Shown piece after piece: positions 4,731 to 37,816 of a stretch of DNA of 64,000 nucleotides; the stretch's first letter is position 1; every line of letters begins with the position of its first letter. The notes beneath the pieces were generated by a model, which was not told the DNA's origin, ran no database searches, and saw only the letters and a list, made by a program, of their open reading frames with translations. Where the stretch lies: the NCBI GenBank assembly GCA_026936335.1, contig JAPMXV010000008.1, positions 124,001-188,000 on the forward strand, given 5' to 3'. Source of the stretch: Mantamonas sphyraenae STR306 (lineage: Eukaryota > Protista > CRuMs). The position numbers and the translations under genes are program-made.

Positions 4731-6122
4731 TCACGTCGTGTTGATGTCTGCCAAAACCTGTCCATCCACCTCCACTCGAGCCTCGTCGCCCTGGGTATCC
4801 CACACACGCGACTGAGACCACACGACACACGCGGCGCCATGCGACAGGCCCCTCTGATGATGTTGAGCCTGGGGCCCGCTGAGAACGGTGAGGGTTTCGC
4901 CTGCCTTGAGCACACACGCACCAGGCAACGTCAGCGACAGATCGTTAGCCACGGCGACCAGCGTGCCACCAGAAAGGTCGATTTCTTCGTCGTGTTCGTT
5001 GGTGATGGTCAGCTTCTCCTGAACGACGTCGAGGCTGAGGTGCAGGCGATGGTCGCTGCCTCCCTGGTGCACACGGCTGATGCACTGGTCGTGCAAGTCA
5101 TACAGCGCCGCCGTGTCCCCGTGGTTGTTCCACATGTAGCGCCTCGTCCACACCAGATGGCCCTCTTTGCCCTGGTGCTGATTTGCCTCGCGCCCGCTCC
5201 AAACACACAGCTTGCCACCCGCGGCCACAGACACCCCAGCCTGGAAATGAAAGGTTTGGCTGCCGGTTACACTCTCCAGTCTCCACCCTTCCAGGCTCAC
5301 GTCCTCACTCCCGTGGTTGGCAATTGTCACACACTCGCGTTCCAGATCCAGGTCTGCCACCGTCACGGAGGAAAACTCGGCACTGGTAAAGTCAAACGCG
5401 TCCACCTCCCTGCCCATCTCGTCGTACAATGTGACATGTTCCTTGCGTGGGTCGAAAACCTGCGTGTCGCTGACGGCAATGTCTGTGGGTGGGTCGTGGC
5501 GCAGTCGCGCGTTCTTTCCAAACCACAGACGCACGTCTGCTTGCGCCTCCACCTCCACACTCTCCTCAATGGACGCCGAGGGCGCACCGGCCTCGTCGTC
5601 CCGTGCCGCAATGGCCCAGCCACGCAGGTCCACGCGCTGCCGCGTGCGCAGGTGCAGTAGGGCCTCGCCGTCGGTGAGGTTGAGCGATTCGATCTGCACG
5701 GCAGCGTCCTCCTGCGCCGCCTCCAGCTCCGACGCCACCCGTTGACGTTTGAAGCCGTGGTAGTTGCCCACGTGGGTCATATGCACCACCTCGCCGTGTC
5801 GGTTGCACAGGTTGACGATGTCTTCGTTGTGCAGGTTCCACTTGGCCACCGACGCCGTCCAGTGCAGCGACGGCCGCTCCGGTGCGTACTCTCGTGTGGG
5901 ACACACCACCACATCGAGGGTATGGCCATGGAGCAGGGACAGCGAGGACGGAAACGTGAACCGTCTCGACTCGTGGGCTGGAAACACAAGCGACCAGCCG
6001 CTGAGCAGCAGATCCAACGTCGTGCCGTTGTCCACACGCAGCACCAGTTCGCCATCCGTGTGCCTTTCCACACACAGAGTCACCGCGTCGTGGTGCACAT
6101 CCTCCAGCGAGCGTTTTGACAT
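4731..6122 (-). CDS. Protein of four tandem lamin-tail (LTD, Ig-fold) domains
   Basis: Four units with the LTD pattern, e.g. VTIANHGSEDVSLEGWRL...FHFQAGVSVAAGGKLCVWSG...LVWTRRYMWNNHGDTAALYD. Intronless, 463 aa. Confidence 0.8.
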   Translation of the reverse strand: MSKRSLEDVHHDAVTLCVERHTDGELVLRVDNGTTLDLLLSGWSLVFPAHESRRFTFPSSLSLLHGHTLDVVVCPTREYAPERPSLHWTASVAKWNLHNEDIVNLCNRHGEVVHMTHVGNYHGFKRQRVASELEAAQEDAAVQIESLNLTDGEALLHLRTRQRVDLRGWAIAARDDEAGAPSASIEESVEVEAQADVRLWFGKNARLRHDPPTDIAVSDTQVFDPRKEHVTLYDEMGREVDAFDFTSAEFSSVTVADLDLERECVTIANHGSEDVSLEGWRLESVTGSQTFHFQAGVSVAAGGKLCVWSGREANQHQGKEGHLVWTRRYMWNNHGDTAALYDLHDQCISRVHQGGSDHRLHLSLDVVQEKLTITNEHDEEIDLSGGTLVAVANDLSLTLPGACVLKAGETLTVLSGPQAQHHQRGLSHGAACVVWSQSRVWDTQGDEARVEVDGQVLADINTT

Positions 6123-12722: not shown

Positions 12723-15700
12723 ATGAAGAATCGGCAGTACGCGACACATTCGGTAGTGTTGCTGTGTTTGCTCGCCACAATTTTGGCGACAACCGGCGGC
12801 GCTCTCGCAACAGCGGCCCCGACGATCACTTCGTCGCCTACGGGCCCCACCGTCATCAACGATGACACTACGCATTCGGTCAATTTCACCATCTCCAGCC
12901 CCGACTCGGGTGCTGTCACAGTGGTGGCTAACGTGACCACGGGCACCATCGAGCCGACCACAAACGTCACCGGAGTCGTCTTTACTTCGGGTGGCTTTGG
13001 TTCCCCCTCCAAGACTGTTGCTTTCAACACCACGGTGACTCTTGCTAACCAGGTCCTGACCAGCATCAAGTATACCCCCGTGACGAATTTCAACGGTACG
13101 GACAACATCAACCTGTACGTGTACAACCCGACCTTTGCTACGTACACCTACGACCTCACTGTGCTTGCAGTCAACGCAGCACCTACCATCACGCTGCCTT
13201 CGGCCCTGACTGTGAACGAGGACAGCACCAACAACACCGTTGGTGCCATCGTTGTTTCCGACGTCGATGTTACCTCCAGCATGCTCACCGTGTGGGTCTC
13301 TGCCCAGTACGGTACCATCGTGTTTGGCACAAACGCCAACCTGGTGTTCACCAGCGGCTCGGGCGGTGCAGCAATGATGCACCAGTTCAACGCCACGCTG
13401 ACAAACGCCAACGCGGCCCTGGCCAACCTGAAGTACACTCCGACCGCAAACTGGAACGGCATGGACTACATTACCGTGAACGTGAGCGACAACGGGTACA
13501 CCGGCACCGGCGGCGCCATGATGGCAGCCTCCTCGCTGGGTGTGACTGTGACGGCGGTGAACGACGCGCCGACGATCACGCTGCCTTCGGCCCTTACTGT
13601 GAACGAGGACAGCACGAACAACACCGTGGGCACGATCGCCATCGCCGACGTCGACGTTGGCGCGATGATGGTCACCGTGTGGGTTTCTGCCCAGTACGGT
13701 ACCGTTGCTTTTGGCACAAACGCCAACCTGGTGTTCACCAGCGGCTCGGGCGGTGCAGCAATGATGCACCAGTTCAACGCAACTGTGACGAACGCCAACG
13801 CAGCCCTGGCCAACCTGAAGTACACCCCGACCGCAAACTGGAACGGCATGGACTACATCACCGTGAACGTGAGCGACAACGGGTACACCGGCACCGGCGG
13901 CGCCATGATGGCAGCCTCCTCGCTGGGTGTGACTGTGACGGCTGTGAACGACGGCCCGACGATCACTGCGCCCTCTGCACTGAGTGTGACTGAGGACAGC
14001 ACGAACAACACCGTGGGTGCCTTTGTTGTTGCCGACATTGACGTTGGCGCAATGATGCTCACCGTGTGGGTCAAGGCCCAGTACGGTACCGTTGCCTTTG
14101 GCACAAACGCCAACCTGGTTTTCACCAGCGGCTCGGGCGGTGCAGCAATGATGCACCAGTTCAACGCAACTGTGACGAACGCCAACGCGGCCCTGGGCAA
14201 CCTGAAGTATTCGCCCAACGCAAACTGGAACGGCATGGACTACATCACCGTGAACGTGAGCGACAACGGATACATGGGCACTGGCGGCGCCATGATGGCA
14301 AACGCGGCAATTGGTGTGACTGTGTCGGCTGTGAACGACGCGCCGACGATCACGCTGCCTTCGGCCCTTACTGTGACTGAGGACAGCACGAACAACACCG
14401 TGGGCACGATCGCCATCGCCGACGTCGACGTTGGCGCGATGATGGTCACCGTGTGGGTTTCTGCCCAGTACGGTACCGTTGCTTTTGGCACAAACGCCAA
14501 CCTGGTGTTCACCAGCGGCTCGGGCGGTGCAGCAATGATGCACCAGTTCAACGCAACTGTGACGAACGCCAACGCAGCCCTGGCCAACCTGAAGTACACT
14601 CCGACCGCAAACTGGAACGGCATGGACTACATTACCGTGAACGTGAGCGACAACGGGTACACCGGCACCGGCGGCGCCATGATGGCAGCCTCCTCGCTGG
14701 GTGTGACTGTGACGGCTGTGAACGACGGCCCAACGATCACTGCGCCCTCTGCACTGAGTGTGACTGAGGACAGCACGAACAACACCGTGGGTGCCTTTGT
14801 TGTTGCCGACATTGACGTTGGCGCAATGATGCTCACCGTGTGGGTCAAGGCCCAGTACGGTACCATCGCCTTTGGCACAAACGCCAACCTGGTGTTCACC
14901 AGCGGCTCGGGCGGTGCAGCAATGATGCACCAGTTCAACGCAACTGTGACGAACGCCAACGCGGCCCTGGGCAACCTGAAGTATTCGCCCAACGCAAACT
15001 GGAACGGCATGGACTACATCACCGTGAACGTGAGCGACAACGGATACATGGGCACTGGCGGCGCCATGATGGCAAACGCGGCAATTGGTGTGACTGTGTC
15101 GGCTGTGAACGACGCGCCGACGATCACGCTGCCTTCGGCCCTTACTGTGACTGAGGACAGCACGAACAACACCGTGGGCACGATCGCCATCGCCGACGTC
15201 GACGTTGGCGCGATGATGGTCACCGTGTGGGTTTCTGCCCAGTACGGTACCGTTGCTTTTGGCACAAACGCCAACCTGGTGTTCACCAGCGGCTCGGGCG
15301 GTGCAGCAATGATGCACCAGTTCAACGCCACGGTGACGAACGCCAACGCGGCCCTGGGCAACCTGAAGTACACCCCGACCGCAAACTGGAACGGCATGGA
15401 CTACATTACCGTGAACGTGAGCGACAACGGGTACACCGGCACCGGCGGCGCCATGATGGCAGCCTCCTCGCTCGGTGTGACTGTGACGGCTGTGAACGAC
15501 GGCCCGACGATCACTGCGCCCTCTGCACTGAGTGTGACTGAGGACAGCACGAACAACACCGTGGGTGCCTTTGTTGTTGCCGACATTGACGTTGGCGCAA
15601 TGATGCTCACCGTGTGGGTCAAGGCCCAGTACGGTACCATTGCCTTTGGCACAAACGCCAACCTGGTGTTCACCAGCGGCATGGGCGGTGCAGCAATGAT

Positions 15701-18700
15701 GCACCAGTTCAACGCAACTGTGACGAACGCCAACGCGGCCCTGGGCAACCTGAAGTATTCGCCCAACGCAAACTGGAACGGCATGGACTACATCACCGTG
15801 AACGTGAGCGACAACGGATACATGGGCACTGGCGGCGCCATGATGGCTAACGCGGCAATTGGTGTGACTGTGTCGGCTGTGAACGACGCGCCGACGATCA
15901 CGCTGCCTTCGGCCCTTACTGTGACTGAGGACAGCACGAACAACACCGTGGGCACGATCGCCATCGCCGACGTCGACGTTGGCGCGATGATGGTCACCGT
16001 GTGGGTTTCTGCCCAGTACGGTACCGTTGCTTTTGGCACAAACGCCAACCTGGTGTTCACAAGCGGCTCGGGCGGTGCAGCAATGATGCACCAGTTCAAC
16101 GCAACTGTGACGAACGCCAACGCGGCCCTGGCCAACCTGAAGTACACCCCGACCGCAAACTGGAACGGCATGGACTACATCACCGTGAACGTGAGCGACA
16201 ACGGGTACACCGGCACCGGCGGCGCCATGATGGCAGCCTCCTCGCTGGGTGTGACTGTGACGGCTGTGAACGACGGCCCGACGATCACTGCGCCCTCTGC
16301 ACTGAGTGTGACTGAGGACAGCACGAACAACACCGTGGGTGCCTTTGTTGTTGCCGACATTGACGTTGGCGCAATGATGCTCACCGTGTGGGTCAAGGCC
16401 CAGTACGGTACCGTTGCCTTTGGCACAAACGCCAACCTGGTGTTCACCAGCGGCTCAGGCGGTGCAGCAATGATGCACCAGTTCAACGCAACTGTGACGA
16501 ACGCCAACGCGGCCCTGGGCAACCTGAAGTATTCACCCAACGCAAACTGGAACGGCATGGACTACATCACCGTGAACGTGAGCGACAACGGATACATGGG
16601 CACTGGCGGCGCCATGATGGCAAACGCGGCAATTGGTGTGACTGTGTCGGCTGTGAACGACGCGCCGACGATCACGCTGCCTGCCGCTCTGGTTGTGAAC
16701 CTGGACAGCACCAACAACACTGTGGGCACCATTTCCGTCGCAGATGTTGATGTTGGCGCGATGATGGTCACCGTGTGGGTCTCTGCCCAGCACGGTACCA
16801 TCGTGTTTGGCACAAACGCCAACCTGGTGTTCACCAGCGGCTCGGGCGGTGCAGCAATGATGCACCAGTTCAACGCAACTGTGACGAACGCCAACGCGGC
16901 CCTGGGCAACCTGAAGTACACTCCGACCGCAAGCTACAGCGGCATGGACTACATCACCGTGAACGTGAGCGACAACGGATACACCGGCACTGGCGGCGCC
17001 ATGATGGCAGCCTCCTCGCTCGGTGTGACTGTGACTGGCAACAACGCAGCCCCGACGATCACGCTGCCTTCGGCCCTGACTGTGGCTGAGGACAGCATGA
17101 ACAACACTGTGGGCGCCATTGTGGTGGCCGATGCAGACGCAGGAGCCAACATGCTCACCGTGTGGGTCAAGGCCCAGTACGGTACCGTTGCTTTTGGCAC
17201 AAACGCCAACCTGGTGTTCACCAGCGGCTCGGGCGGTGCAGCAATGATGCACCAGTTCAACGCCACGGTGACGAACGCCAACGCGGCCCTGGCCAACCTG
17301 AAGTACACCCCGACCGCAAACTGGAACGGCATGGACTACATCACCGTGAACGTGAGCGACAACGGGTACACCGGCCTTGGCGGCGCCAAGATGGCAAACG
17401 CGGCACTGGGTGTGACTGTGACGGCTGTGAACGACGGCCCGACGATCACTGCGCCCTCTGCACTGAGTGTGACTGAGGACAGCACGAACAACACCGTGGG
17501 TGCCTTTGTTGTTGCCGACATTGACGTTGGCGCAATGATGCTCACCGTGTGGGTCAAGGCCCAGTACGGTACCATCGTGTTTGGCACAAACGCCAACCTG
17601 GTGTTCACCAGCGGCATGGGCGGTGCAGCAATGATGCACCAGTTCAACGCAACTGTGACGAACGCCAACGCGGCCCTGGGCAACCTGAAGTATTCGCCCA
17701 ACGCAAACTGGAACGGCATGGACTACATCACCGTGAACGTGAGCGACAACGGATACATGGGTGCCGGTGGTCCCATGATGGCAGGAAGCAGCATCGGCGT
17801 GATGGTGACTCCTGTGAACGATGGCCCCACCATCAGCGTGCCCGGCGCGCTCACTGTTCAGCAAGGCGCAATCGGGTCAATTAACGGTATCGGCGTGTCT
17901 GATATCGACTCTGCCACGGGAGCGCTCACTGCCAACCTTACCGTTGGCCACGGCATGTTCTGGTTCGCAAACGCCGCCACTGGCATCACCTTCAACATGG
18001 GCACCATGAATGCCAACAACACCATGGTTTCCATCAGCGGCCAGGTGACCGCTCTCAACACCTTTGTCAGCGCCATCCGCTACGTGTCCAACGCCACGTA
18101 TGTTGGCTCCGATTCTCTGTCCATCTGGGTCACCGACAACGGAAACACCGGCTCCGGTGGCGCCATGATGGCCAATGCCGTGGTGAACATCACTGTCACC
18201 AACACTCCGGTGGCCCCCGTCAACCAGGCACCCACAATCGCCCTCCCTTCTCCGCTCACTGTGGCTGAGGACAGCATGGGCACCCCCGCTGGCGCCATCG
18301 TGATCTCCGATGTCGATGTCGGCGCAAACATGCTCACTGTCTGGGTCAAGGCCCAACAGGGTCAGCTGATGATCGCCAACACGGCTGGTCTGTCGTTCCA
18401 GAGCGGCAACGGCATGTGGGCTATGATGCACCAGTTCAACGCCACCCTGATGGCTGCGAACGCGGCGCTCGCCAACATGACGTACAAGCCCAACGCCAAC
18501 TTCAACGGCATGGACTACATCACCGTCAACGTGAGCGACAACGGATACATGGGGCACTGCCGGCGGCGCCATGATGGCTGACGCTACTCTGGCCGTGACT
18601 GTGACGGCTGTGAACGACGGCCCGACGATCACCACAAGCGTGTCGACCTTCACCGTTGCAGAGGACAGCACCAACACGGGCACCAACGCGTTCCCGGCTG

Positions 18701-21700
18701 CCATTGTTGTGGCGGACGACGCCATGGGCAACCAGCCGCTGTACTTCAACCTGACGGTGACGAACGGCAAGTTGGTGCTGTTGAACTCGGGTGGTCTGGC
18801 GGCAATCGGTGGCGCAGCTGGACCGACGAGCGGCCAGAACCCTGGCACGGACTCGTTCCAGTTCAACGCCACGGTGGCAGGCTTCAACGGCGCGTTCGGC
18901 AACCCGCTGGTGCGATTTGTGCCCACACCCAACTTTGCCGGCACCGCCAAGATCATGATCTACGTGAACGACTACGGCATGACTGGCGCCGGTGGACCGA
19001 AGAGCTCTATGTTTATGTTTGACGTCACGGTGACGGGTGTCAATGACGCCCCGACCCTCATGCTCCCTTCTCCGCTCACTGTGGCTGAGGACAGCATGGG
19101 CGCCCCCGTTGGCGCCATCATGATCTCCGATGTCGATGTCGGCGCAAACATGCTCACTGTCTGGGTCAAGGCCCAACAGGGTCAGCTGATGATCGCCAAC
19201 ACGGCTGGTCTGTCGTTCCAGAGCGGCAACGGCATGTGGGCTATGATGCACCAGTTCAACGCCACCCTGATGGCTGCGAACGCGGCGCTCGCCAACATGA
19301 CGTACAAGCCCAACGCCAACTTCAACGGCATGGACTACATCACCGTCAACGTGAGCGACAACGGATACATGGGTGCCGGTGGTCCCATGATGGTTGACGC
19401 TACTCTGGCCGTGACTGTGACGGCTGTGAACGACGGCCCGACGATCACCACCAGCGTGTCGACCTTCACCGTTGCAGAGGACAGCACCAACACGGGCACC
19501 AACGCGTTCCCGGCTGCCATTGTTGTGGCGGACGACGCCATGGGCAACCAGCCGCTGTACTTCAACCTGACGGTGACGAACGGCAAGTTGGTGCTGTTGA
19601 ACTCGGGTGGTCTGGCGGCAATCGGTGGCGCAGCTGGACCGACGAGCGGCCAGAACCCTGGCACGGACTCGTTCCAGTTCAACGCCACGGTGGCAGGCTT
19701 CAACGGCGCGTTCGGCAACCCGCTGGTGCGATTTGTGCCCACACCCAACTTTGCCGGCACCGCCAAGATCATGATCTACGTGAACGACTACGGCATGACT
19801 GGCGCCGGTGGACCGAAGAGCTCTATGTTTATGTTTGACGTCACGGTGACGGGTGTCAATGACGCCCCGACCCTCATGTTCCCCTCGGACATGTCCGTGG
19901 CTGAGGACAGCGTCAACAACACCGTGGCCCCCATCATGGTGTCGGACGTCGATTCGATGAACATGCAGATCCAAGTCAACCTCACCACCATGCGTGGTAA
20001 CGTCATGATTGGCAACACCGCCGGTCTGATGTTTGCACCGGGCATGATGGGCGGCAAGATGATCTCCTTCAAGGCCACAGTGATGGCTGCGAACGGAGCT
20101 CTGGGCTCACTCAAGTACACGCCGGACGCCAATGTGTACGGCATGGCCGACCAGCTGAAGGTCTCTGTGTCTGACCTGGGCAACACTGGCACTGGCGGCG
20201 AGCTCACGGCAAGCGGCGAGCTCACCATCAACATCACGGGCGTCAACGACGGCCCGACTCTCATGTTCCCCTCGCCCATGACTGTGGCTGAGGACAGCAT
20301 GAACAACATGGTGCCCAAGATCATGATCGCCGACGTCGACTCCATGATGGGCATGATGACCGTCGCCGTGTGTGGTCGATGCACGGCAACGTGGCCATCA
20401 CCAACACTTCGGGTCTGACGTTCACCATGGGCAACGGCGCAGCCGCCAAGATGCACATGTTCAACGCCAACCTGATGTGGGCCAACAACGCGCTGATGTC
20501 GCTGACGTACACTCCGGACGCCAACTTCTACAGCGGCCCCAACGACAACATCCACGTCAACGTGACCGACAACGGCAACACGGGAGCCGGCGGACCCATG
20601 AGCGCCATGGGCATGCTGCAGGTGACTGTGACCGGTGTCAACGACGCACCCACCATCTCTGTGCCCTCGTCGCCCTTCCTGGTCAACGACGACACAGACC
20701 TTACTGTCTCGGGCGTCAGCGTAAGCGACGTTGATGTGATGAACCACATGCTGCAGGCCAACGTGTCTGTCATGCACGGGCGCATCACCTTCCCGAGCGC
20801 AGCCGGCGTCATGTTTGAGCAGGGAAGCCCCATGGGCAACATGATGGTGTCTGTCAAGGCCAACCTGACGTCCCTCAACGCCCTGCTGAGCACCATTGTG
20901 TATCGCTCCAACCTCAACTTCCAGGGTGCTGAGATGCTCAAGATCAGCGTCTCGGACATGGGCTGGACCGGACAGGGCGGCGCAATGATGGCCATGGCCA
21001 CGGTGAACATCAACGTGACCCAGGGTGTCAATGCCGCCCCGTCGCTCATGTTCCCCTCGCCCATGACTGTGGCCGAGGACAGCATGAACAACATGGTGCC
21101 CAAGATCATGATCTCCGATCCCGACGTGGGCATGGGCATGATGACCGTCGCTGTGTGGTCGATGCACGGCAACGTGGCCATCACCAACACTTCGGGCCTT
21201 ACGTTCACCATGGGCAACGGCGCAGCCGCCAAGATGCACATGTTCAACGCCAACCTGATGTGGGCCAACAACGCGCTGATGTCGCTGACGTACACTCCGG
21301 ACGCCAACTTCTACAGCGGCCCCAACGACAACATCCACGTCAACGTGACCGACAACGGCAACACCGGCATTGGTGGTGCCAAGAGTGACATGGGCATGCT
21401 GCAGGTGACCGTGACCGGTGTCAACGACGGCCCCGTGCTGACTATGCCTGCCTCGCCCATCATGGCGATGGAAGACATGGCAGTCAACGTCACGGGCATC
21501 ATGCTCAGCGACGTCGATGTGATGAACGGCAACATGATGGTCAACGCATCGGTGATGCACGGCACCCTTTCGTTCCCGATGGTGCCTGGCGTGACCTTTG
21601 TCGCAGGTCAGGGCATGGGCAGCATGATGGTGTCTGTGACAGGCCAGCTGATGGCTCTGAGGAACCTGCTGGGTGCTCTGACGTACGTGCCGACCGCCAA

Positions 21701-24700
21701 CTGGAACGGCATGGACACGCTCAAGGTCTGGGTGTCGGACATGGGCAACAACGGCGCCGGTGGCGTCATGACCGCCATGGGCGCGGTGAACATCACTGTG
21801 GATGCAGTCAACGACGGACCCACTCTGACGGTGCCCATGACGGTGTTCAACCTGACTCGCAACGCGGGTCCGGTGACGGTGAACAACCCGATTAACTACG
21901 CAGACCAGGACGGCATGAACATGCCGGTGATGGTCAACATCAGCAGCATGGAGGGCAAGATCACGCTGTCGTCCACGGCTGGCATGACGTTTGTCATGGG
22001 CACTGGCTCGTCGGACGCCATGATGAGCTTCACGGCTCTGCCGAATGTCATCAACAACCTGGCGTCGCTGTCGTTCAAGTCCAACCTGGGCGTGTCCGGC
22101 ATGGCTCAGGTCAAGGTGTGGGTCTCGGACATGGGCGCCACAGGCAAGCCTGGCCCGCTGACGGACATGAAGATGATTCGCTTCAACATTGTGGCCTGCC
22201 CGCTTGACTGCGGAGGCAACGGTGTGTGCAGGCTGGACGGCACCTGCCAGTGCAACCCCGGCTGGAAGACGGAGAACTGCAGTGTTCCTCTGTGCCCCGG
22301 CAACTGCAACAACGGCCAGTGCAACCCGGACGGAACATGCACATGCAACGCCGGCTGGACTGGCGGCGCGTGCAACATTAAGCTGTGTGACCTCGTGAAC
22401 GGCGGCGTGTGCTCTGGCAACGGTCAGTGCAACAACGGCACGTGCGCCTGCGACACCGGCTTCACTGGCAACAACTGCCAGACGGCGCCTGCGCCTGCGT
22501 ACCAGAACGCACGTCTGTCCAACTCGGGTGCGCTGATCGCCATCACCTTTTCGCTGGACACCAACCGTGGCGGCGAGGGCGGTGCTGCGTTTGATTGCAG
22601 CCGTGTGCTGGACCCGGCCACGGTGGCCCTTCTCCAGGGAGCTTCGTGTGCATTCACCACCGACCGTGTGCTCACCGTGTCGCTGAGCAGTCAGTCCACC
22701 GTGGTGGCTGGCAACCAAATCGGCATTGTCGCCAACAAGATTGGCGCCAAGCAGAACTCGGCTGGTCCCTACACGGCCGCCAGCTCCAACGCGCTGTTGT
22801 CGCCGGTATCGCCCGTGACTCCCACAGCCGTGCTGGCCATGCCGCAGCAGGTGGCCTCGTGCGACAACCTGCCCGTCAACGGCGACAACTCGTTCGGCTC
22901 GGGTGGACGCACGCTGTCCTTCTACTGGACCGTGGGTGCCAACACCGACGACCTGGCTGCCGTCACCACGCTGGTCAACGGCCTTGCCACCTCTGCCTCG
23001 CAGTTTTCGCTGAACAACGGCGTGCAGATGACCACGTCCAACGGCAACTACACAATCTGCCTCAAGGTGGGCAACTGGCTGGGTCTGAACAGCTCCACGG
23101 TGTGCAGGACCTCCAGGCGCTCGTCGGATCCGCTGCCGCAGGTGGTGATCCCGGGCAGTGCCTCGCGCTCGCACAGGCGCCCGCTGCAGCTGAACCTGGC
23201 CGTGACGGCCACGGTGGCCACGTGCGCGGGTCCCTCGCAGCAGGGACTGACCTTTATGTGGACGCAGGTGTCGGGCCCCAGCGCTTCGCTGTCGGGCGTG
23301 ACGACCACCAACCCGAGGCTGGTGGTGCCTGCCAACACACTCACTGTGGGCGGTACCTATGTGTACCGCGCCACTGTGTCGGTGACAGGCAGCGGTTCGG
23401 TGAGCAGCTCGGCCGAGGTGACTGTCAACGTGGTGGCATCGGCCATCACGGCGGTGATTGCCAACGGCGACCGCGCCGTGTCTCGCTCGTCGGCCTTTTC
23501 GCTGATGAGTGCTTCTGTGGATCCTGACGATCCCAACATGGCCACTGCGCCCACGTACGCGTGGACGTGTGTGATCCGCGGCACGTCGACGGCGTGCACG
23601 GACGTCAACTCGCAGCCGCTGGTGTTTGCTGACGCACGCCAGATCACGGTGGCTGCCGGGTCGCTGTTGCAGAACACGTACACGTTCTCGCTGCAGGTGA
23701 CCAAGGGCTCGCGCTCGGACTCGACGTCGGTGGACATCACCGTGTCGAACGCCGCCGTGCCCTCGGTGACGATCACTGCGCCGGACGTGGAGCAGGTGCT
23801 GCCCCAGGAGCGCCTGGTGCTGACCGGCAACGCCGTGTCGTCGACCAACGACCAGATCACGTACCTGTGGTCTGTGGACGGCAACGCGCTGAACCTGGAC
23901 GACCGCACCAACGTGCTGGCCACGTCCAAGAACTCGCGCGTGCTGGTGGTGCGCGCCAACGCCCTGAAGCCGCAGACGTACAAGTTCCGCCTGACGGCGA
24001 CGGACAACAACGGCGCAGGCTTTGCGCAGGTGACCATCGCGGTGAACCAGCCGCCCACGGCAGGCACACTGACGGTGAGCCCGGCCACGGGTCTGGTGCT
24101 CAACACCACCTTTACGCTGACGACGCAGGACTGGGCGGACACGCCGGGCGACTCGCCCTTCACGTACACGTTTGGTTACCTGGAGAACGGCGTGGAGACG
24201 GTGCTCGTGTCGGGCTCCCAGTCGCCGCAGCTGCAGACCACGCTGCCCCAGGGCCAGGTGCGTCTGTTTGTGCGCGCCTTTGACGTGCTGGGCTCCCGCT
24301 CGCAGGCAGCCTACGTCAACGCCACGGTGAACCCGCTGCCGGTGCTTGCCGGTGGCAACAAGGCCAACGCCGCCGCTCAGGTGGAGAACGCGGCCAACGA
24401 GCTGGACAAGGCTTCGGAGAGCAAGGATGTGAACAAGCTGTCGTCGCTGGCCAACACGCTGACCAGTGTGCTGACGGACACGTTTACGAACAACGAGGCC
24501 GACGCCACGGTCAAGGCTCGCGTGAACAATGTGCGCGCCAAGATTCTGACGGCTGTGACGGCGGTGGTGGAACTCAGCGGCAAGGTGTCCAAGGACCAGG
24601 TGCAGGGTTTCTCGCGCACCCTCAAGAGTGCGTCGAACGACGTGAACCTGACCCCGGAGAACCAGAACAAGGCGCTGAACCTGGTGAAGAAGCTGGTGGA

Positions 24701-25856
24701 GGCGGCCAACATTGACCGCGACACCACCAACGACATTGTGAGCACACTGGGCAACCTGTTCCGTGCCATCCGTGGCGCTGGCAACGGCGGAGGCGCAAGC
24801 CCGGCCATTGTTGCTGGCGCACGCCGCCTGCTGGCCATCGACCAGCAGGCGCGTGCCACCGCGCTCTCGCTCGCGCAGAATGTGCGCAGCGTGGGCCGCT
24901 CGGTGAGCAACGGACTGGTGTGCGGCGAGGACCCGGTGCTGAGCACGCAGTCGGATCTGTCCATGCGTGTGACGCAGGCAGACGCGGCCAACGTGGCCAA
25001 CGGGGCCGCACGCACGCTTTCGGGCGCCTCGTTCACGGTGCCCGCGGGCTCGTTTGGTACGGGCTGCAAGACGCTGGTGGAGTACAGCTTTGCCGGCGAC
25101 CTGCGCTCGTACGGTCAGGACAACATGCTGCGCTCGAACCTGTACGCCATGTACGTGCAGGATCAGCCGGTGTCTGGCCTGACCAACGGCATCACCATTG
25201 TGCTGCCGCTGACCAGTGCATTCAACGCCTCGCAGACGGGCGCGTGCGTGTTCTGGGACAACTCGACGGAGACGTACTCGACGAGCGGCTGCACGACGGG
25301 TGCCATCACGTCGAGCACGGTGACGTGCACGTGCACGCATCTGACCGAGTTTGCAGTGCAGACGCGACAGGTGCAGAGCACACCCACGCCGACGCCGACG
25401 GCCACGCCTACGCCGACGCCGACGGGCTCCAGCAGCCCGACGCCGACGCCTGCGGCCACTGGCCCTTCGTCCTCGTTTGGCAACGTGATTGCCGGGCTTG
25501 AGGACAACACGGCATACGGCATCATTGGAGGCGGTGCAGGCGGCATTGTGGTGATTGTGGTGGTCATTCTGGTCATGCGCCGCAGCGCGAACCGCCAGGG
25601 TGGCCAGGGTGGAAGCACGGGTGGTGGCGACGAGGAGTCGTTCTTCCAGACGGCTCGCGGAAGCCGCGGTGGTAAGGGCACCGGCGGTGGAAGCAGCTCC
25701 AACATCCAGTTCTTTGACCCGTCGGCCGACTCGGGCGCCGAATGGTTCAACCTCAACCAGACGCGCTCGGCCACGGCCACCACGCAGCGTCGCGAGCTCA
25801 AGCGCCAGTCGAGCACCGTGGGTCGCAACAAGGCCCGCCGTACGCTCCTGGAGTAA
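12723..25856 (+). CDS. Giant (~4,370 aa) single-pass surface adhesin/receptor: signal peptide, ~24 cadherin-like/Ig repeats, 3 EGF, REJ, GAIN/GPS, PT linker, TM and cytoplasmic tail (apparent frameshifts at ~18553 and ~20370)
   Basis: Signal MKNRQYATHSVVLLCLLATILATTGGALA. Repeats with EDS / DVD / YTPTANWNG.D / VTAVNDAP. EGF units CPLDCGGNGVC...CQCNPGW. REJ motifs SASVDPDD, YLWSV and VNQPPTAGTLTVSPATG...FTL...WAD. GPS CVFWD...SGC...CTCTHLTEFAV. TM YGIIGGGAGGIVVIVVVILVM then RR. ORFs 12438-18581, 18571-20418 and 20370-25856 join; comparison with the paralogous repeats locates the indels. Confidence 0.88.
13175..17820 (+). repeat. Coding tandem array of 12 x 387-bp (129 aa) near-identical units, mostly alternating A/B (774-bp higher-order period)
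   Basis: The shadow ORFs recur at exact 387-bp spacing (13466, 13853, 14240 ... 17336). A units: TLPSALTV / TIAIADVD / VSAQ. B units: TAPSALSV / AFVVADID / VKAQ. Confidence 0.95.
18243..19878 (+). repeat. Tandem duplication of a two-domain block (816-bp period) within the giant gene
   Basis: gaggacagcaccaacacgggc occurs at 18661 and 19477; the two-domain blocks are near identical. Confidence 0.9.
20261..21425 (+). repeat. Duplicated Met-rich domain (~20261-20640 and ~21047-21425) within the giant gene
   Basis: atgttcccctcgcccatgactgtggc...aacatggtgcccaagatcatg occurs twice, ~786 bp apart. Confidence 0.9.
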
Positions 25857-26004
25857 GCTCTGCGCGCGCAAAGGGACGACGAAGAGAAGTGAAGAAGTGA
25901 GGAGAAATGGAAATCGATGGAGGAAAACCACCAAGCATCTCATTCATCCATGTTGGCGCGACGGAAGCAGTGTGCAAGTGCGTTCATTGTGTTGTGCAGC
26001 GTCG

Positions 26005-27651
26005 AAATTTACGACGAGGCAGCGGATGCGGCGCGCTTGGCACGAGCCTTGGCGACAGCCTGGGCACGGCGCTCCTTGGCCTCCTTGACACGCTGGGCCA
26101 CCAGCTTCTCGTACTCAGCCTTCTGCTTCAGGTTCTTCTGGTAGCGAGCCTGCTTCTCCAGAATCTGCTTGTTCTTGTGGCGGATGCGGCGCGGCGTAAT
26201 CAGGCGCTGGATCTTGGGGGCCTTCGTCTTGGGCTTCTCCTGGCCAGCCTTGAGCGGCAGAGTGCGGCGCACCACATACTGGCGCACATCGTCCTCCTTC
26301 GACAGGTTGAACAGCTTGCGGATGTTGTTGGCACGCTTGGGACCCAGACGGCGCGGCACCTTCTCGTCGGTCAGACCAGGGATCGGGTTGGCTCCCTGCT
26401 TCACCACAGACAGAGCCAGCACACCAATCTCCGGGCTCACAATGCACCCACGCACAGACTTGCGGCGCATGTAACCGGCGCACGGAGTACGACGCGGGTG
26501 GAAGCCCTTCATGCCCGGGCGCATCAGCAGACGCACACGGCCGGGAGTCAGCACACCCTGCATCATCGGGAAGCCCTGCTTGTCGTTGCCACCCGTGATG
26601 CGGAAGCGGTAGCCTGCGTACTGCTCGCCCAGCAGGTCGCCCTCAAACTCAGATGCCATCTGACGGTCGTACAGGTTGCGCCTGTGGGTTCACAGTGTGT
26701 CTCTCACGGGGTCAGTTTTCGTCAGAGCAACCTCAGCTCCAAATTTCCTCTCAACACACGCCCTGCTTTTCTCCTCTCTTCTCTCTCTTTCCACTCTGCC
26801 ACACTGGCTGTTTCCATGCAAGCACCTCTTTGCCACACGGCCACATCCTCTGCCATGTCTTCTCCACCTCTGCAACGCGTGCCTCCACACACAAAGGCAC
26901 ACACGGGCCCACCGCCTGCCAGCCTGCTCAACATGCAAGTTTTTCACTTGCCACTCCACCGGCCCTCCACCTTTCCCCGTTGCCCCGTGTCTCAATCCCT
27001 CCTCCTGTGGCCCTTTCCATGTCCATCCCATGCTCCTCCTCTCTCTCTCCTCCTCCTTCCCTTCCACCCTGCCTCTGTGTGTGCCTCCCTCTGGGCCTCG
27101 TGCCAAATTTCCTCCTGCCCACACGTCACTTCAGGCCCTCTCCACGCCTCCACACAACCCTCTGCGTCTTCCCACCCACTCCACATCCTGTGGCCCCTCC
27201 ATTCACAGCGTCTGCGCCGTGTGTGTGTGTCTCGCGTGTCCTCCTGCCTGTGCTGCACCGCCGCAAACAACTCGCTCGCGTCGCATGCAAGCTCCGCCAG
27301 CAAGCCCTTTGTTGCCTGCCCACACCTGCTGTACACACCACACACACACACACGCGCGCTCTGTGCATGCACATCCCTCTCACGCTTCCTCTCCACATCT
27401 CTCTGCAACATACACCAGCTTCTCCTCGTCGATTTCGATCAGCTTGTTCGTGCCGTTGGCGGGGTAGCTGATGTTGAACTGCAGCAGCAAAATTGGGACA
27501 CCCCACAGCGTCAGCCACACGCACACACAGAAACCAGGGACATGGGACACGCATCCTCCCACGCATGGCCAGGGTCATGGCATCACTCTGTGCTCGTGCT
27601 TACCTTCATGATGTGTTTCCGATGGCCAAGTGCGCGCGAACGCCACCGCAA
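26005..27651. repeat. Direct repeat copy A (~1.65 kb; whole RPS6 gene including introns and ~40 bp of upstream sequence)
   Basis: Near-identical to 36167-37816. Confidence 0.95.
26009..27609 (-). CDS. RPS6: 40S ribosomal protein S6 (eS6), copy 1 (exons 27609-27604, ~27478-27413, 26681-26009)
   Basis: MK|[22 protein letters not shown]|[18 protein letters not shown]...[18 protein letters not shown]...RKSVRGCIV...[18 protein letters not shown]...[11 protein letters not shown]. Confidence 0.97.
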
Positions 27652-36051: not shown

Positions 36052-36190
36052 GAGAGATGAAATCCACATTCTGCGTTTGTCGCACATTCCAAACTTGCGA
36101 CGAGACAGCGGCGGGAAGGCGAGCTGAGAGAGATGAAATCTACATTCTGCGTTTGTCGCACATTCCAAATTTACGACGAGGCAGCGGATG
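36041..36190. repeat. Imperfect 76-bp tandem duplication spanning the convergent SNF5 and RPS6 stop codons
   Basis: aggcgagctgagagagatgaaatcYacattctgcgtttgtcgcacattccaaa...cgacgag.cagcgg begins at 36041 and again at 36117. Confidence 0.9.
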
Positions 36191-37816
36191 CGGCGCGCTT
36201 GGCACGGGCCTTGGCGACGGCCTGGGCACGGCGCTCCTTGGCCTCCTTGACACGCTGGGCCACCAGCTTCTCGTACTCAGCCTTCTGCTTCAGGTTCTTC
36301 TGGTAGCGAGCCTGCTTCTCCAGAATCTGCTTGTTCTTGTGGCGGATGCGGCGCGGCGTAATCAGGCGCTGGATCTTGGGGGCCTTCGTCTTGGGCTTCT
36401 CCTGGCCAGCCTTGAGCGGCAGAGTGCGGCGCACCACATACTGGCGCACATCGTCCTCCTTCGACAGGTTGAACAGCTTGCGGATGTTGTTGGCACGCTT
36501 GGGACCCAGACGGCGCGGCACCTTCTCGTCGGTCAGACCAGGGATCGGGTTGGCTCCCTGCTTCACCACAGACAGAGCCAGCACACCAATCTCCGGGCTC
36601 ACAATGCACCCACGCACAGACTTGCGGCGCATGTAACCGGCGCACGGAGTACGACGCGGGTGGAAGCCCTTCATGCCCGGGCGCATCAGCAGACGCACAC
36701 GGCCGGGAGTCAGCACACCCTGCATCATCGGGAAGCCCTGCTTGTCGTTGCCACCCGTGATGCGGAAGCGGTAGCCTGCGTACTGCTCGCCCAGCAGGTC
36801 GCCCTCAAACTCAGATGCCATCTGACGGTCGTACAGGTTGCGCCTGTGTGTGGGTTCACAGTGTGTCTCTCGGGGTCAGTTTTCGTCCCAGCAACCTCAG
36901 CTCCAAATTTCCTCTCAACACACGCCCTGCTTTTCTCCTCTCTTCTCTCTCTTTCCACTCTGCCACACTGGCTGTTTCCATGCAAGCACCTCTTTGCCAC
37001 ACGGCCACATCCTCTGCCATGTCTTCTCCACCTCTGCAACCCGTGTCTCTACACAAAAAGGCACACACGGGCCCACCGCCTGCCAGCCTGCTCAACATGC
37101 AAGTTTTTCACTTGCCACTCCACCGGCCCTCCACCTTTCCCCGTTGCCCCGTGTCTCAATCCCTCCTCCTGTGGCCCTTTCCATGTCCATCCCATGCTCC
37201 TCCTCTCCCTCTCTTCCTCCTTCCCTTCCACCCTGCCTCTGTGTGTGCCTCCCTCTGGGCCTCGTGCCAAATTTCCTCCTGCCCACACGTCACTTCAGGC
37301 CCTCTCCACGCCTCCACACAACCCTCTGCGTCTTCCCACCCACTCCACATCCTGTGGTCCTCCCATTCACAGCGTCTGCGCCGTGTGTGTGTGTCTGGCA
37401 TGTCCTCCTGCCTGTGCTGCACCGCCGCAAACGACTCGCTCGCGTCGCATGCAAGCTCCGCCAGCAAGCCCTTTGTTGCCTGCCCACACCTGCTGTACAC
37501 ACACACACACACACACACACGCGCTCTGTGCATGCACATCCCTCTCACGCTTCCTCTCCACATCTCCCTGCAACATACACCAGCTTCTCCTCGTCGATTT
37601 CGATCAGCTTGTTCGTGCCGTTGGCGGGGTAGCTGATGTTGAACTGCAGCAGCAAAATTGGGACACCCCACAGCGTCAGCCACACGCACACACAGAAACC
37701 AGGGACATGGGACACGCATCCTCCCACGCATGGCCAGGGTCGTGACGTAACTCTGTGCTCGTGCTTACCTTCATGATGTGTTTCCGATGGCCAAGTGCGC
37801 GCGAACGCCACCGCAA
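36167..37816. repeat. Direct repeat copy B of the RPS6 gene
   Basis: Offset ~10,162 bp from copy A. Confidence 0.95.
36171..37774 (-). CDS. RPS6: 40S ribosomal protein S6 (eS6), copy 2 (same exon structure, identical protein)
   Basis: Translation identical to copy 1; only a few synonymous and intronic differences. Confidence 0.97.

What the first reader, a model, noticed from the sequence alone, without database searches (positions are those of the whole stretch)
12723..25856. Chimeric giant surface receptor: bacterial-adhesin cadherin-like stalk on an EGF-REJ-GAIN self-cleaving membrane anchor
Seen: a 13.1-kb intronless gene among intron-containing neighbours. It encodes ~24 repeats with the consensus (E)DS...DVD...LKYTPTANWNG.D.ITVNVSDNG.TG.GG...VTVTAVNDAP, then three EGFs (~22197-22480), a REJ module, a GAIN/GPS domain, a PT linker, one TM and a ~90 aa tail. 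Established: this repeat type is typical of bacterial T1SS/RTX biofilm adhesins (cadherin-like/VCBS/tandem-95 type), whereas REJ plus GAIN define polycystin-1, and GAIN also defines adhesion GPCRs; those proteins have 11 and 7 TMs. Inference: a bacterial Ca2+-stiffened stalk was probably acquired horizontally, gained many N-glycosylation sequons (NAT, NVS, NNT), and was grafted onto a eukaryotic mechanosensitive, sheddable anchor. This would give a ~100-nm-scale releasable tether for gliding, substrate attachment or bacterial prey capture. It is the best candidate here for an undescribed system.
Basis: partly seen in the sequence, partly recalled or inferred. Interest (0 to 1): 0.88.

Follow-up and report, generated by a model that had tools for sequence, protein, structure and literature searches.

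The report
Cadherin-like stalk on self-cleaving anchor
The gliding flagellate Mantamonas encodes a giant one-pass surface protein in which a long rod of calcium-binding repeats, of a kind best known from bacterial adhesins, sits on a self-cleaving polycystin-type base; both parts already occur in other protists, and what looks new is the very long rod and the family of such proteins in this genome.

Summary
The domain order is real: signal peptide, 24 cadherin-like repeats, 3 EGF, REJ, GAIN with intact HL|T, Pro/Thr linker, one TM, 93-aa tail. The genome is Mantamonas sphyraenae. As assembled it is not one ORF: two small insertions (+4, +2 nt) inside near-identical repeats break the frame. They look like consensus errors, but reads could not be checked. 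The fusion is not an artefact: the stalk-anchor junction lies in one open frame, an unbroken paralog exists (contig C71), and M. plastica has a transcribed ortholog (51% identical over 1846 aa).

The 'undescribed graft' reading weakens. REJ-GPS-one-TM is known (sea-urchin SpREJ1) and occurs in many protists. The same repeat subtype, in one or two copies, abuts the REJ module in Chlorokybus, Ploeotia and metagenomic proteins. The repeat tree names no bacterial donor, and sequon gain is weak here. What seems new is the long, Met-rich, homogenising stalk, one of a genome-wide family of such stalks on different anchors. The scan noted the same architecture on other contigs of this genome. Most likely role: a Ca2+-stiffened, sheddable surface tether. 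New variant; interest 0.52.

The parts
12723..12812 (+). Start codon and signal peptide (hydrophobic stretch ending in an Ala-x-Ala-type site; cleavage point judged by eye)
   Evidence: homology with paralog C71 begins at its own Met and signal peptide. An in-frame Met 76 codons upstream has no such support
12813..13169 (+). Repeat 1: divergent 119-aa tip domain, shared with paralog C71 (38% identity over signal peptide plus tip); there is no separate lectin or vWA head
13170..17813 (+). Repeats 2-13: homogenised 387-nt array; units 3-10 alternate A/B (98-99% nt identity between like units, 86-87% between A and B)
17814..22196 (+). Repeats 14-24: more divergent cadherin-like units with an 820-nt two-unit duplication (96% identical); Met content up to 11%
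18554..18557 (+). Frame break 1: 4 extra nt in repeat 15; the site carries both sequence variants seen in sister repeats one after the other
20367..20368 (+). Frame break 2: 2 extra nt at a GT run in repeat 20; cancels break 1
22197..22484 (+). Three teneurin/tenascin-type EGF domains
   Evidence: (EGF_Teneurin, 3 stretches)
22485..24455 (+). Pre-REJ Cys-containing beta domain, PKD-like (K319L-type) beta domains and REJ module (Pfam REJ at 23250-24455)
24366..25364 (+). GAIN domain: helical subdomain A and beta subdomain B; GPS at 25245-25358; predicted autoproteolysis between Leu (25341-25343) and Thr (25344-25346) of HL|T-x-F
24822..24833 (+). RRLL motif just after a disordered loop of GAIN subdomain A, kept in M. 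plastica; possible second processing site
25368..25500 (+). Pro/Thr/Ser-rich linker between GAIN and the membrane
25521..25577 (+). Single transmembrane helix (hydrophobic core)
25578..25856 (+). Cytoplasmic tail and stop codon; two blocks conserved with M. plastica, FFDPSADSGxEWF (25710-25748) and LKRQxSTVG (25797-25823)

Best explanation
One ~4375-aa type I surface glycoprotein of Mantamonas sphyraenae; the two frame breaks are most likely assembly errors (inferred). Shown by computation: a chain of 24 cadherin-fold beta-sandwiches with conserved linker acids (Glu17, Asp31-x-Asp33, Asp107, Asn131-Asp132), then 3 EGF, REJ, a complete GAIN domain with HL|T, a mucin-like linker, one TM and a short tail with two conserved blocks. 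Inferred from cadherins and RTX-adhesin extenders: Ca2+ in seawater stiffens the repeats into a rod of roughly 100-110 nm (about 4.5 nm per domain, own knowledge), longer with the REJ base. Inferred from aGPCRs and polycystin-1: the GAIN domain cuts itself in the secretory pathway and the ectodomain stays clamped to the membrane stub. With no 7TM or 11TM unit to activate, the cut most likely works as a release joint. The protein then holds the cell to a surface, another cell or prey through its tip or stalk, and lets go by shedding under load. The tail couples it to trafficking or the cortex. Origin: the anchor is an old eukaryotic module; the repeat is shared with bacteria and a few other eukaryotic lineages, and in Mantamonas it was amplified into long stalks on several anchors before M. 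sphyraenae and M. plastica split.
For: Repeat fold: model pLDDT 97; top PDB matches are cadherins and the AhLap extender. Ligand positions are 94-100% conserved (Asn131-Asp132, Asp31, Asp33, Asp107, Glu17). Ca2+ stiffening of such extenders: PMC7493085. GAIN fold and motif; the GAIN domain suffices for autoproteolysis (PMC3321182). Single-gene evidence: repeats 21-24 and the anchor share one ORF; the unbroken 3456-aa paralog on C71; M. plastica transcripts with 4-10 repeats plus the whole anchor; ortholog and paralog pairs at 100 SH-aLRT. Breaks match merged repeat variants, and frame changes also occur in the arrays on C4, C42 and C61; the assembly is PacBio polished with Racon and Pilon. GC3 of 0.79-0.87 is like that of host genes, 0.69-0.81.
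Against: Cleavage, Ca2+ binding, localisation and adhesion are all untested. No ligand-binding head domain is present. The repeat lacks the first Asp of the cadherin DxND linker and the LDRE motif, so it may bind fewer Ca2+ and be more flexible. Some GAIN domains with good motifs stay uncleaved, or stay associated after cleavage (own knowledge).
Confidence: 0.55

Rival explanations
1. A polycystin-1-like sensor: the stalk is a mechanical or ligand antenna, and the one-TM stub (or the peptide exposed by GAIN release) gates a separate PKD2/TRP-type channel, as proposed for one-TM SpREJ1 in sperm.
For: At least 11 strong PKD_channel loci in the genome. Antibodies to SpREJ1, which has one TM, raise intracellular Ca2+ (PMC1934368). 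The tail blocks are conserved over species. A paralog on C42 carries the same stalk on REJ-GPS with several further predicted TM segments.
Against: No PLAT, coiled coil or channel segment in this protein; a 45-aa Pro/Thr linker holds the GAIN away from the membrane; no PKD_channel gene was found in the window (one search lists none on contig C8).
Confidence: 0.2
2. A passive coat or spacer: a glycosylated, Met-rich brush that shields the cell (from oxidants, metals, predators or viruses) and is renewed by GAIN shedding, with no specific adhesive role.
For: No head domain. The stalk has 5.5-11% Met against a median of 0.8% (maximum 2%) in bacterial homologs and 1.5% in the C44 paralog; the ortholog keeps 7%. 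The array is homogenising fast.
Against: The divergent tip domain is kept between old paralogs, which suits a binding role; Ca2+-linker residues that favour a rigid rod are kept.
Confidence: 0.13
3. The breaks are real: in this strain the locus is a decaying or frameshifted allele that yields a secreted ~1950-aa stalk fragment, while the intact function rests on the other allele or on the C71 paralog.
For: The assembly has the breaks; the genome is diploid; tandem arrays mutate by slippage.
Against: Only two small insertions, both at positions where sister repeats differ; no in-frame stops otherwise; anchor and tail are well conserved with M. plastica.
Confidence: 0.12
4. On origin only: the repeat entered the Mantamonas lineage by its own transfer from bacteria and was grafted onto the anchor there, independently of the copies in Chlorokybus and euglenids.
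For: Units on C44 and C61 are 45-55% identical to bacterial units and share fine motifs. Nearly all named top hits are bacterial. A bacterivore has the opportunity, and horizontal transfer has been proposed for the patchy spread of cadherin-like domains (PMC8164589). Repeat-bearing REJ proteins are scattered over the REJ tree (9 changes, at least 4 forced).
Against: No supported donor clade (9 of 113 branches starred). The same subtype sits 5-16 residues before the REJ module in 9 non-Mantamonas proteins. The closest Atlas cluster by features and by shape has eukaryotic (Euglenozoa) members.
Confidence: 0.4

Closest known systems
Sea-urchin SpREJ1/8/9 (one-TM members of the PKD1/REJ family; PMC1934368)
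   Same: REJ module, GPS and a single TM; large surface glycoprotein
   Different: Distal part is C-type lectin/PKD-type, not 24 cadherin-like repeats; sperm signalling role
Unnamed protist REJ-GAIN-1TM proteins: Trimastix marina P0145 (EGF-REJ-GAIN-PT-1TM-short tail), Stygiella P0161, Mastigamoeba P0229, Phalansterium P0172, Synstelium P0193, Soliformovum P0198
   Same: The whole anchor, often with HLT and a Pro/Thr linker
   Different: No unit of this repeat subtype detected
Chlorokybus atmophyticus P0282 and P0267
   Same: Bacterial Ig/cadherin-like domains, including one unit of the same subtype directly before the REJ module, then REJ, GPS-like end, Pro-rich linker, one TM, short tail
   Different: Only one such unit, LamG heads, no EGF spacer, degenerate GPS
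Extender regions of bacterial RTX/T1SS and 'tandem-95'/VCBS adhesins (AhLap, PDB 6XI1; PMC7493085)
   Same: Tandem cadherin-fold beta-sandwiches with acidic linkers; 35-55% unit identity to unsolved bacterial relatives
   Different: Sec signal peptide and C-terminal TM rather than T1SS export; no RTX repeats, no distal ligand domain; Met-rich
CELSR/Flamingo adhesion GPCRs
   Same: Cadherin-fold repeats, EGFs and a GAIN domain in one chain (fold matches)
   Different: Canonical PF00028 cadherin repeats, LamG, HRM and 7TM; here REJ and one TM. Probably convergent
Polycystin-1
   Same: PKD-like domains, REJ, GAIN
   Different: 11 TMs with PLAT, channel-like domain and coiled coil, all absent here

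Membership tests
PKD1/REJ family (broad sense) | REJ domain | tested here: met
   Pfam REJ E 4e-49, 15-451 of 452
PKD1/REJ family (broad sense) | GAIN domain with GPS before the first TM | tested here: met
Polycystin-1 (strict) | 11 TMs with PLAT/LH2 and channel-like domain | tested here: not met
   One TM peak, 93-aa tail, no PLAT or PKD_channel hit
Adhesion GPCR / CELSR | 7TM unit after GAIN | tested here: not met
GAIN autoproteases | H-L|T/S motif, conserved Cys and Trp, subdomains A and B | tested here: met
GAIN autoproteases | Actual self-cleavage | not testable with these tools
   Needs expression or proteomics
Canonical (metazoan-type) cadherins | PF00028 repeats with full LDRE and DxND motifs | tested here: not met
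   No PF00028 match in the genome; position before VND is T/V/Q/A; LDRE absent
Bacterial cadherin-like extender repeats (Cadherin_4/Big_9/Cadherin_5) | Pfam match, cadherin fold, conserved linker acids | tested here: met
Bacterial cadherin-like extender repeats (Cadherin_4/Big_9/Cadherin_5) | Ca2+-dependent rigidity | not testable with these tools
   Inferred from PMC7493085
RTX/T1SS adhesins | RTX nonapeptides and C-terminal T1SS signal, N-terminal retention module | tested here: not met
   No such Pfam hit; signal peptide and TM instead
Horizontally acquired gene segment | Nesting within a bacterial clade with support | tested here: inconclusive
   128-column quick tree, mostly open forks; careful search did not finish

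The most novel reading that the evidence does not exclude
Mantamonas, near the base of Amorphea, built a whole family of giant (3,500 to over 9,000 aa) surface tethers from a bacterial adhesin repeat, mounted on interchangeable anchors. The one-TM GAIN members act as force-released breakaway links that make flagellate gliding or attachment possible: an independent invention of a cadherin-plus-GAIN receptor and a living model of how cadherin-type domains entered eukaryotes.
Probability: 0.2. Interest if true: 0.8.

Novelty: new variant of a known kind. Interest (0 to 1): 0.52.

Why it matters
How heterotrophic flagellates stick and glide is largely unknown at the molecular level (own knowledge), and this gives named candidates conserved in two species. 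It adds CRuMs to the patchy map of cadherin-like domains in eukaryotes (PMC8164589 lists Filozoa, SAR, Thecamonas and one green alga), which bears on the origin of cadherins. A GAIN domain with only one TM and no receptor to activate isolates the shedding or tethering role of GAIN cleavage from signalling. No paper describing this protein family was found. The anchor and the repeat-REJ link both occur elsewhere, which limits the surprise.

Tried and rejected
Chimeric assembly or bacterial contamination: rejected (junction in one ORF, paralog C71, M. plastica transcript, eukaryotic neighbours such as RPS6 and VPS8, host-like GC3). Introns as the cause of the breaks: rejected, since the sequence is collinear with sister repeats except for 4 and 2 nt. 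Canonical cadherin: rejected. The read-through protein was not joined for any search: the three pieces were searched apart and only the joined length was computed. The word-based search for the anchor was insensitive (11 hits); the HMMER search gave 4221, of which only the best 150 could be inspected.
Full report
Source. The window is C8:124001-188000 of a 25,061,354-base, 78-contig assembly. This matches the FALCON assembly of Mantamonas sphyraenae, a marine gliding flagellate of the CRuMs group (25.06 Mb, 78 contigs, 59% GC, diploid, genes mostly mono-exonic; PMC10492846). Neighbours are ordinary eukaryotic genes (ACBP, RPS6, VPS8).

The observation. The domain string is there. After a signal peptide come 24 repeats of 119-143 aa that match Big_9, Cadherin_4 and Cadherin_5, then three EGFs, PKD-like domains, REJ and GPS, a Pro/Thr linker, one TM and a 93-aa tail. 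But the stretch is not one ORF: the frame of the start codon holds 12 stops. Relative to sister repeats there are 4 extra nt near 18554 and 2 extra nt near 20367. The first site carries the two variants found in other units side by side, the second is a GT slip, and together they restore the frame. The halves of each broken unit add up to a normal unit. Frame changes also occur in the arrays on C4, C42 and C61, not in those on C44 and C71. Polishing errors in near-identical repeats are the likely cause (inference). The pieces were searched apart; the joined protein (4375 aa by count) was not sent to any search.

The fusion is real. Repeats 21-24 and the entire anchor lie in one open frame (20370-25856). 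Contig C71 holds an unbroken 3456-aa paralog with the same order of domains. EukProt holds M. plastica transcripts (P0001 and isoforms, 4-10 repeats, 5'-incomplete) that are 51% identical over 1846 aa and keep the HLT motif and two tail blocks. In a tree of the REJ region the window gene pairs with P0001 and C71 pairs with a second M. plastica protein, each at 100, and the four group at 97. The architecture therefore predates the split of the two species.

The stalk. A two-unit model has pLDDT 97. Its best PDB matches are cadherin ectodomains and the Aeromonas adhesin extender 6XI1, which is also the best sequence match (E 1e-13). Glu17, Asp31, Asp33, Asp107, Asn131 and Asp132 are 94-100% conserved in Mantamonas units and 92-100% in the mostly bacterial set. 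These correspond to cadherin linker ligands, but the first Asp of DxND and the LDRE motif are missing, and no canonical cadherin domain (PF00028) was found in the genome. In RTX adhesins such linkers bind Ca2+ and stiffen the rod (PMC7493085). At about 4.5 nm per domain (own knowledge) the stalk would span 100-110 nm. Units 3-10 alternate A/B at 98-99% nt identity, so the array is being homogenised. The stalk is Met-rich (5.5-11%, bacterial median 0.8%). Sequons are only 1.28 times expectation here and 0.85 times in the ortholog, though 2.4-2.8 times in paralogs C4, C42 and C13.

The anchor. The model of 24366-25730 shows a helical subdomain, a beta subdomain, a disordered linker and one TM helix, and matches the GAIN domains of BAI3, BAI2, CELSR1 and latrophilins (E 1e-12 to 3e-9). 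The motif is H-L|T-x-F with the conserved Cys and Trp. An RRLL motif follows a disordered loop and is kept in M. plastica; similar motifs occur in the GAIN region of 12 of 34 aligned relatives. This anchor is not new. SpREJ1, 8 and 9 have REJ, GPS and one TM (PMC1934368), and GAIN is known from Dictyostelium and Tetrahymena (PMC3321182). Among the best relatives, 19 of 82 with a GPS have one predicted TM after it, including Trimastix, Stygiella, Mastigamoeba, Phalansterium, Synstelium and Soliformovum. Trimastix P0145 has the same EGF-REJ-GAIN-PT-TM-tail order.

Is the combination unique? Partly. A profile built without non-Mantamonas eukaryote units finds the repeat in 11 of 154 REJ relatives (best reversed-sequence control 14 bits; hits 16-52 bits). 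In 9 of them it ends 5-16 residues before the REJ module, and the aligned units keep the subtype's pattern. Named cases are Chlorokybus P0282 and P0267, which also end in a GPS-like segment, Pro-rich linker, one TM and short tail, and the euglenid Ploeotia P0228. The nearest Atlas cluster has Euglenozoa members, and an unnamed EukProt protein has about ten units (P0109). None of the REJ relatives outside Mantamonas has more than two units, so the long stalk on this anchor was seen only in Mantamonas, within the 150 best hits inspected.

Origin. Mantamonas units are mostly 35-55% identical to bacterial units, which is high for a surface repeat and fits transfer in some direction. The unit tree (116 rows, 128 columns, quick search; the careful search did not finish) has 9 supported branches of 113 and names no donor. 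On the REJ tree the repeat label changes 9 times, at least 4 forced (P0138 was labelled by eye), which fits either old presence with losses or repeated shuffling. GC3 is host-like. A lineage-specific graft is thus possible, about 40%, but not shown.

A family. The genome has at least 150 Cadherin_4 matches on about ten contigs and REJ and GPS domains at about eight loci. In the loci read, the same stalk sits on REJ-GAIN-1TM (window, C71), on two REJ-GPS units followed by more TM segments (C42), on REJ-GPS with a different C-terminal part (C4), and on non-REJ anchors with EGF heads, one ending in an EF-hand (C44, C61). The stalk is a reusable spacer, and this gene is one member.

Mechanism. Most likely (0.55) a Ca2+-stiffened tether whose self-cleaved GAIN joint lets the ectodomain be shed under load, for attachment, gliding or prey contact. 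The anatomy is shown; cleavage, stiffness, ligand and role are inferred. Rivals: an antenna that gates a separate PKD2-type channel (0.2; at least 11 strong channel loci), a passive Met-rich coat (0.13), or a truly broken allele (0.12).

Verdict. Real, conserved and apparently undescribed (no paper found), but built from known parts whose linkage also occurs in other protists. New variant of the one-TM REJ-GAIN receptors; interest 0.52.

Noticed in passing
window 26002-27651 and 36164-37816: A 1.65-kb, 98%-identical direct duplicate of the intron-containing RPS6 gene, 10 kb apart.
   Followed up: partly
window 13170-22196: Met content of the stalk is 5.5-11%, rising toward the membrane, against at most 2% in bacterial homologs; kept in M. 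plastica. Role unexplained.
   Followed up: partly
window 25710-25823: Two tail blocks are almost identical in M. plastica although the rest of the tail drifts; one has an acidic Trp motif, the other looks like a basophilic kinase site (own knowledge).
   Followed up: partly
L004-L007 (C44:523418-552580): Unbroken 9721-codon frame: EGF head, about 55 repeats, predicted TM segments, long tail ending in an EF-hand.
   Followed up: partly
L015-L017 (C42:285148-309668): Repeat stalk with TIG and Cys-rich domains on two tandem REJ-GPS units, followed across a frame change by several TM segments; a polycystin-1-like member.
   Followed up: partly
   Followed up: no
G000 C27:158468-224285, C28:72606-88997, C29:716394-749452, C32:378382-394763: Very long arrays of the same repeat with a period of about 2.7 kb, shared in near-identical form between contigs.
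   Followed up: no
window 4731-6122 (-): Protein with three Pfam lamin-tail-domain matches and no rod domain.
   Followed up: no
whole genome: At least 11 full-length PKD_channel matches, many for a 25-Mb flagellate genome.
   Followed up: no
L013-L014 (C56:75539-81436): Cadherin-like repeats of another subtype behind an integrin-beta-like vWA start (read by eye), with almost no sequons.
   Followed up: no
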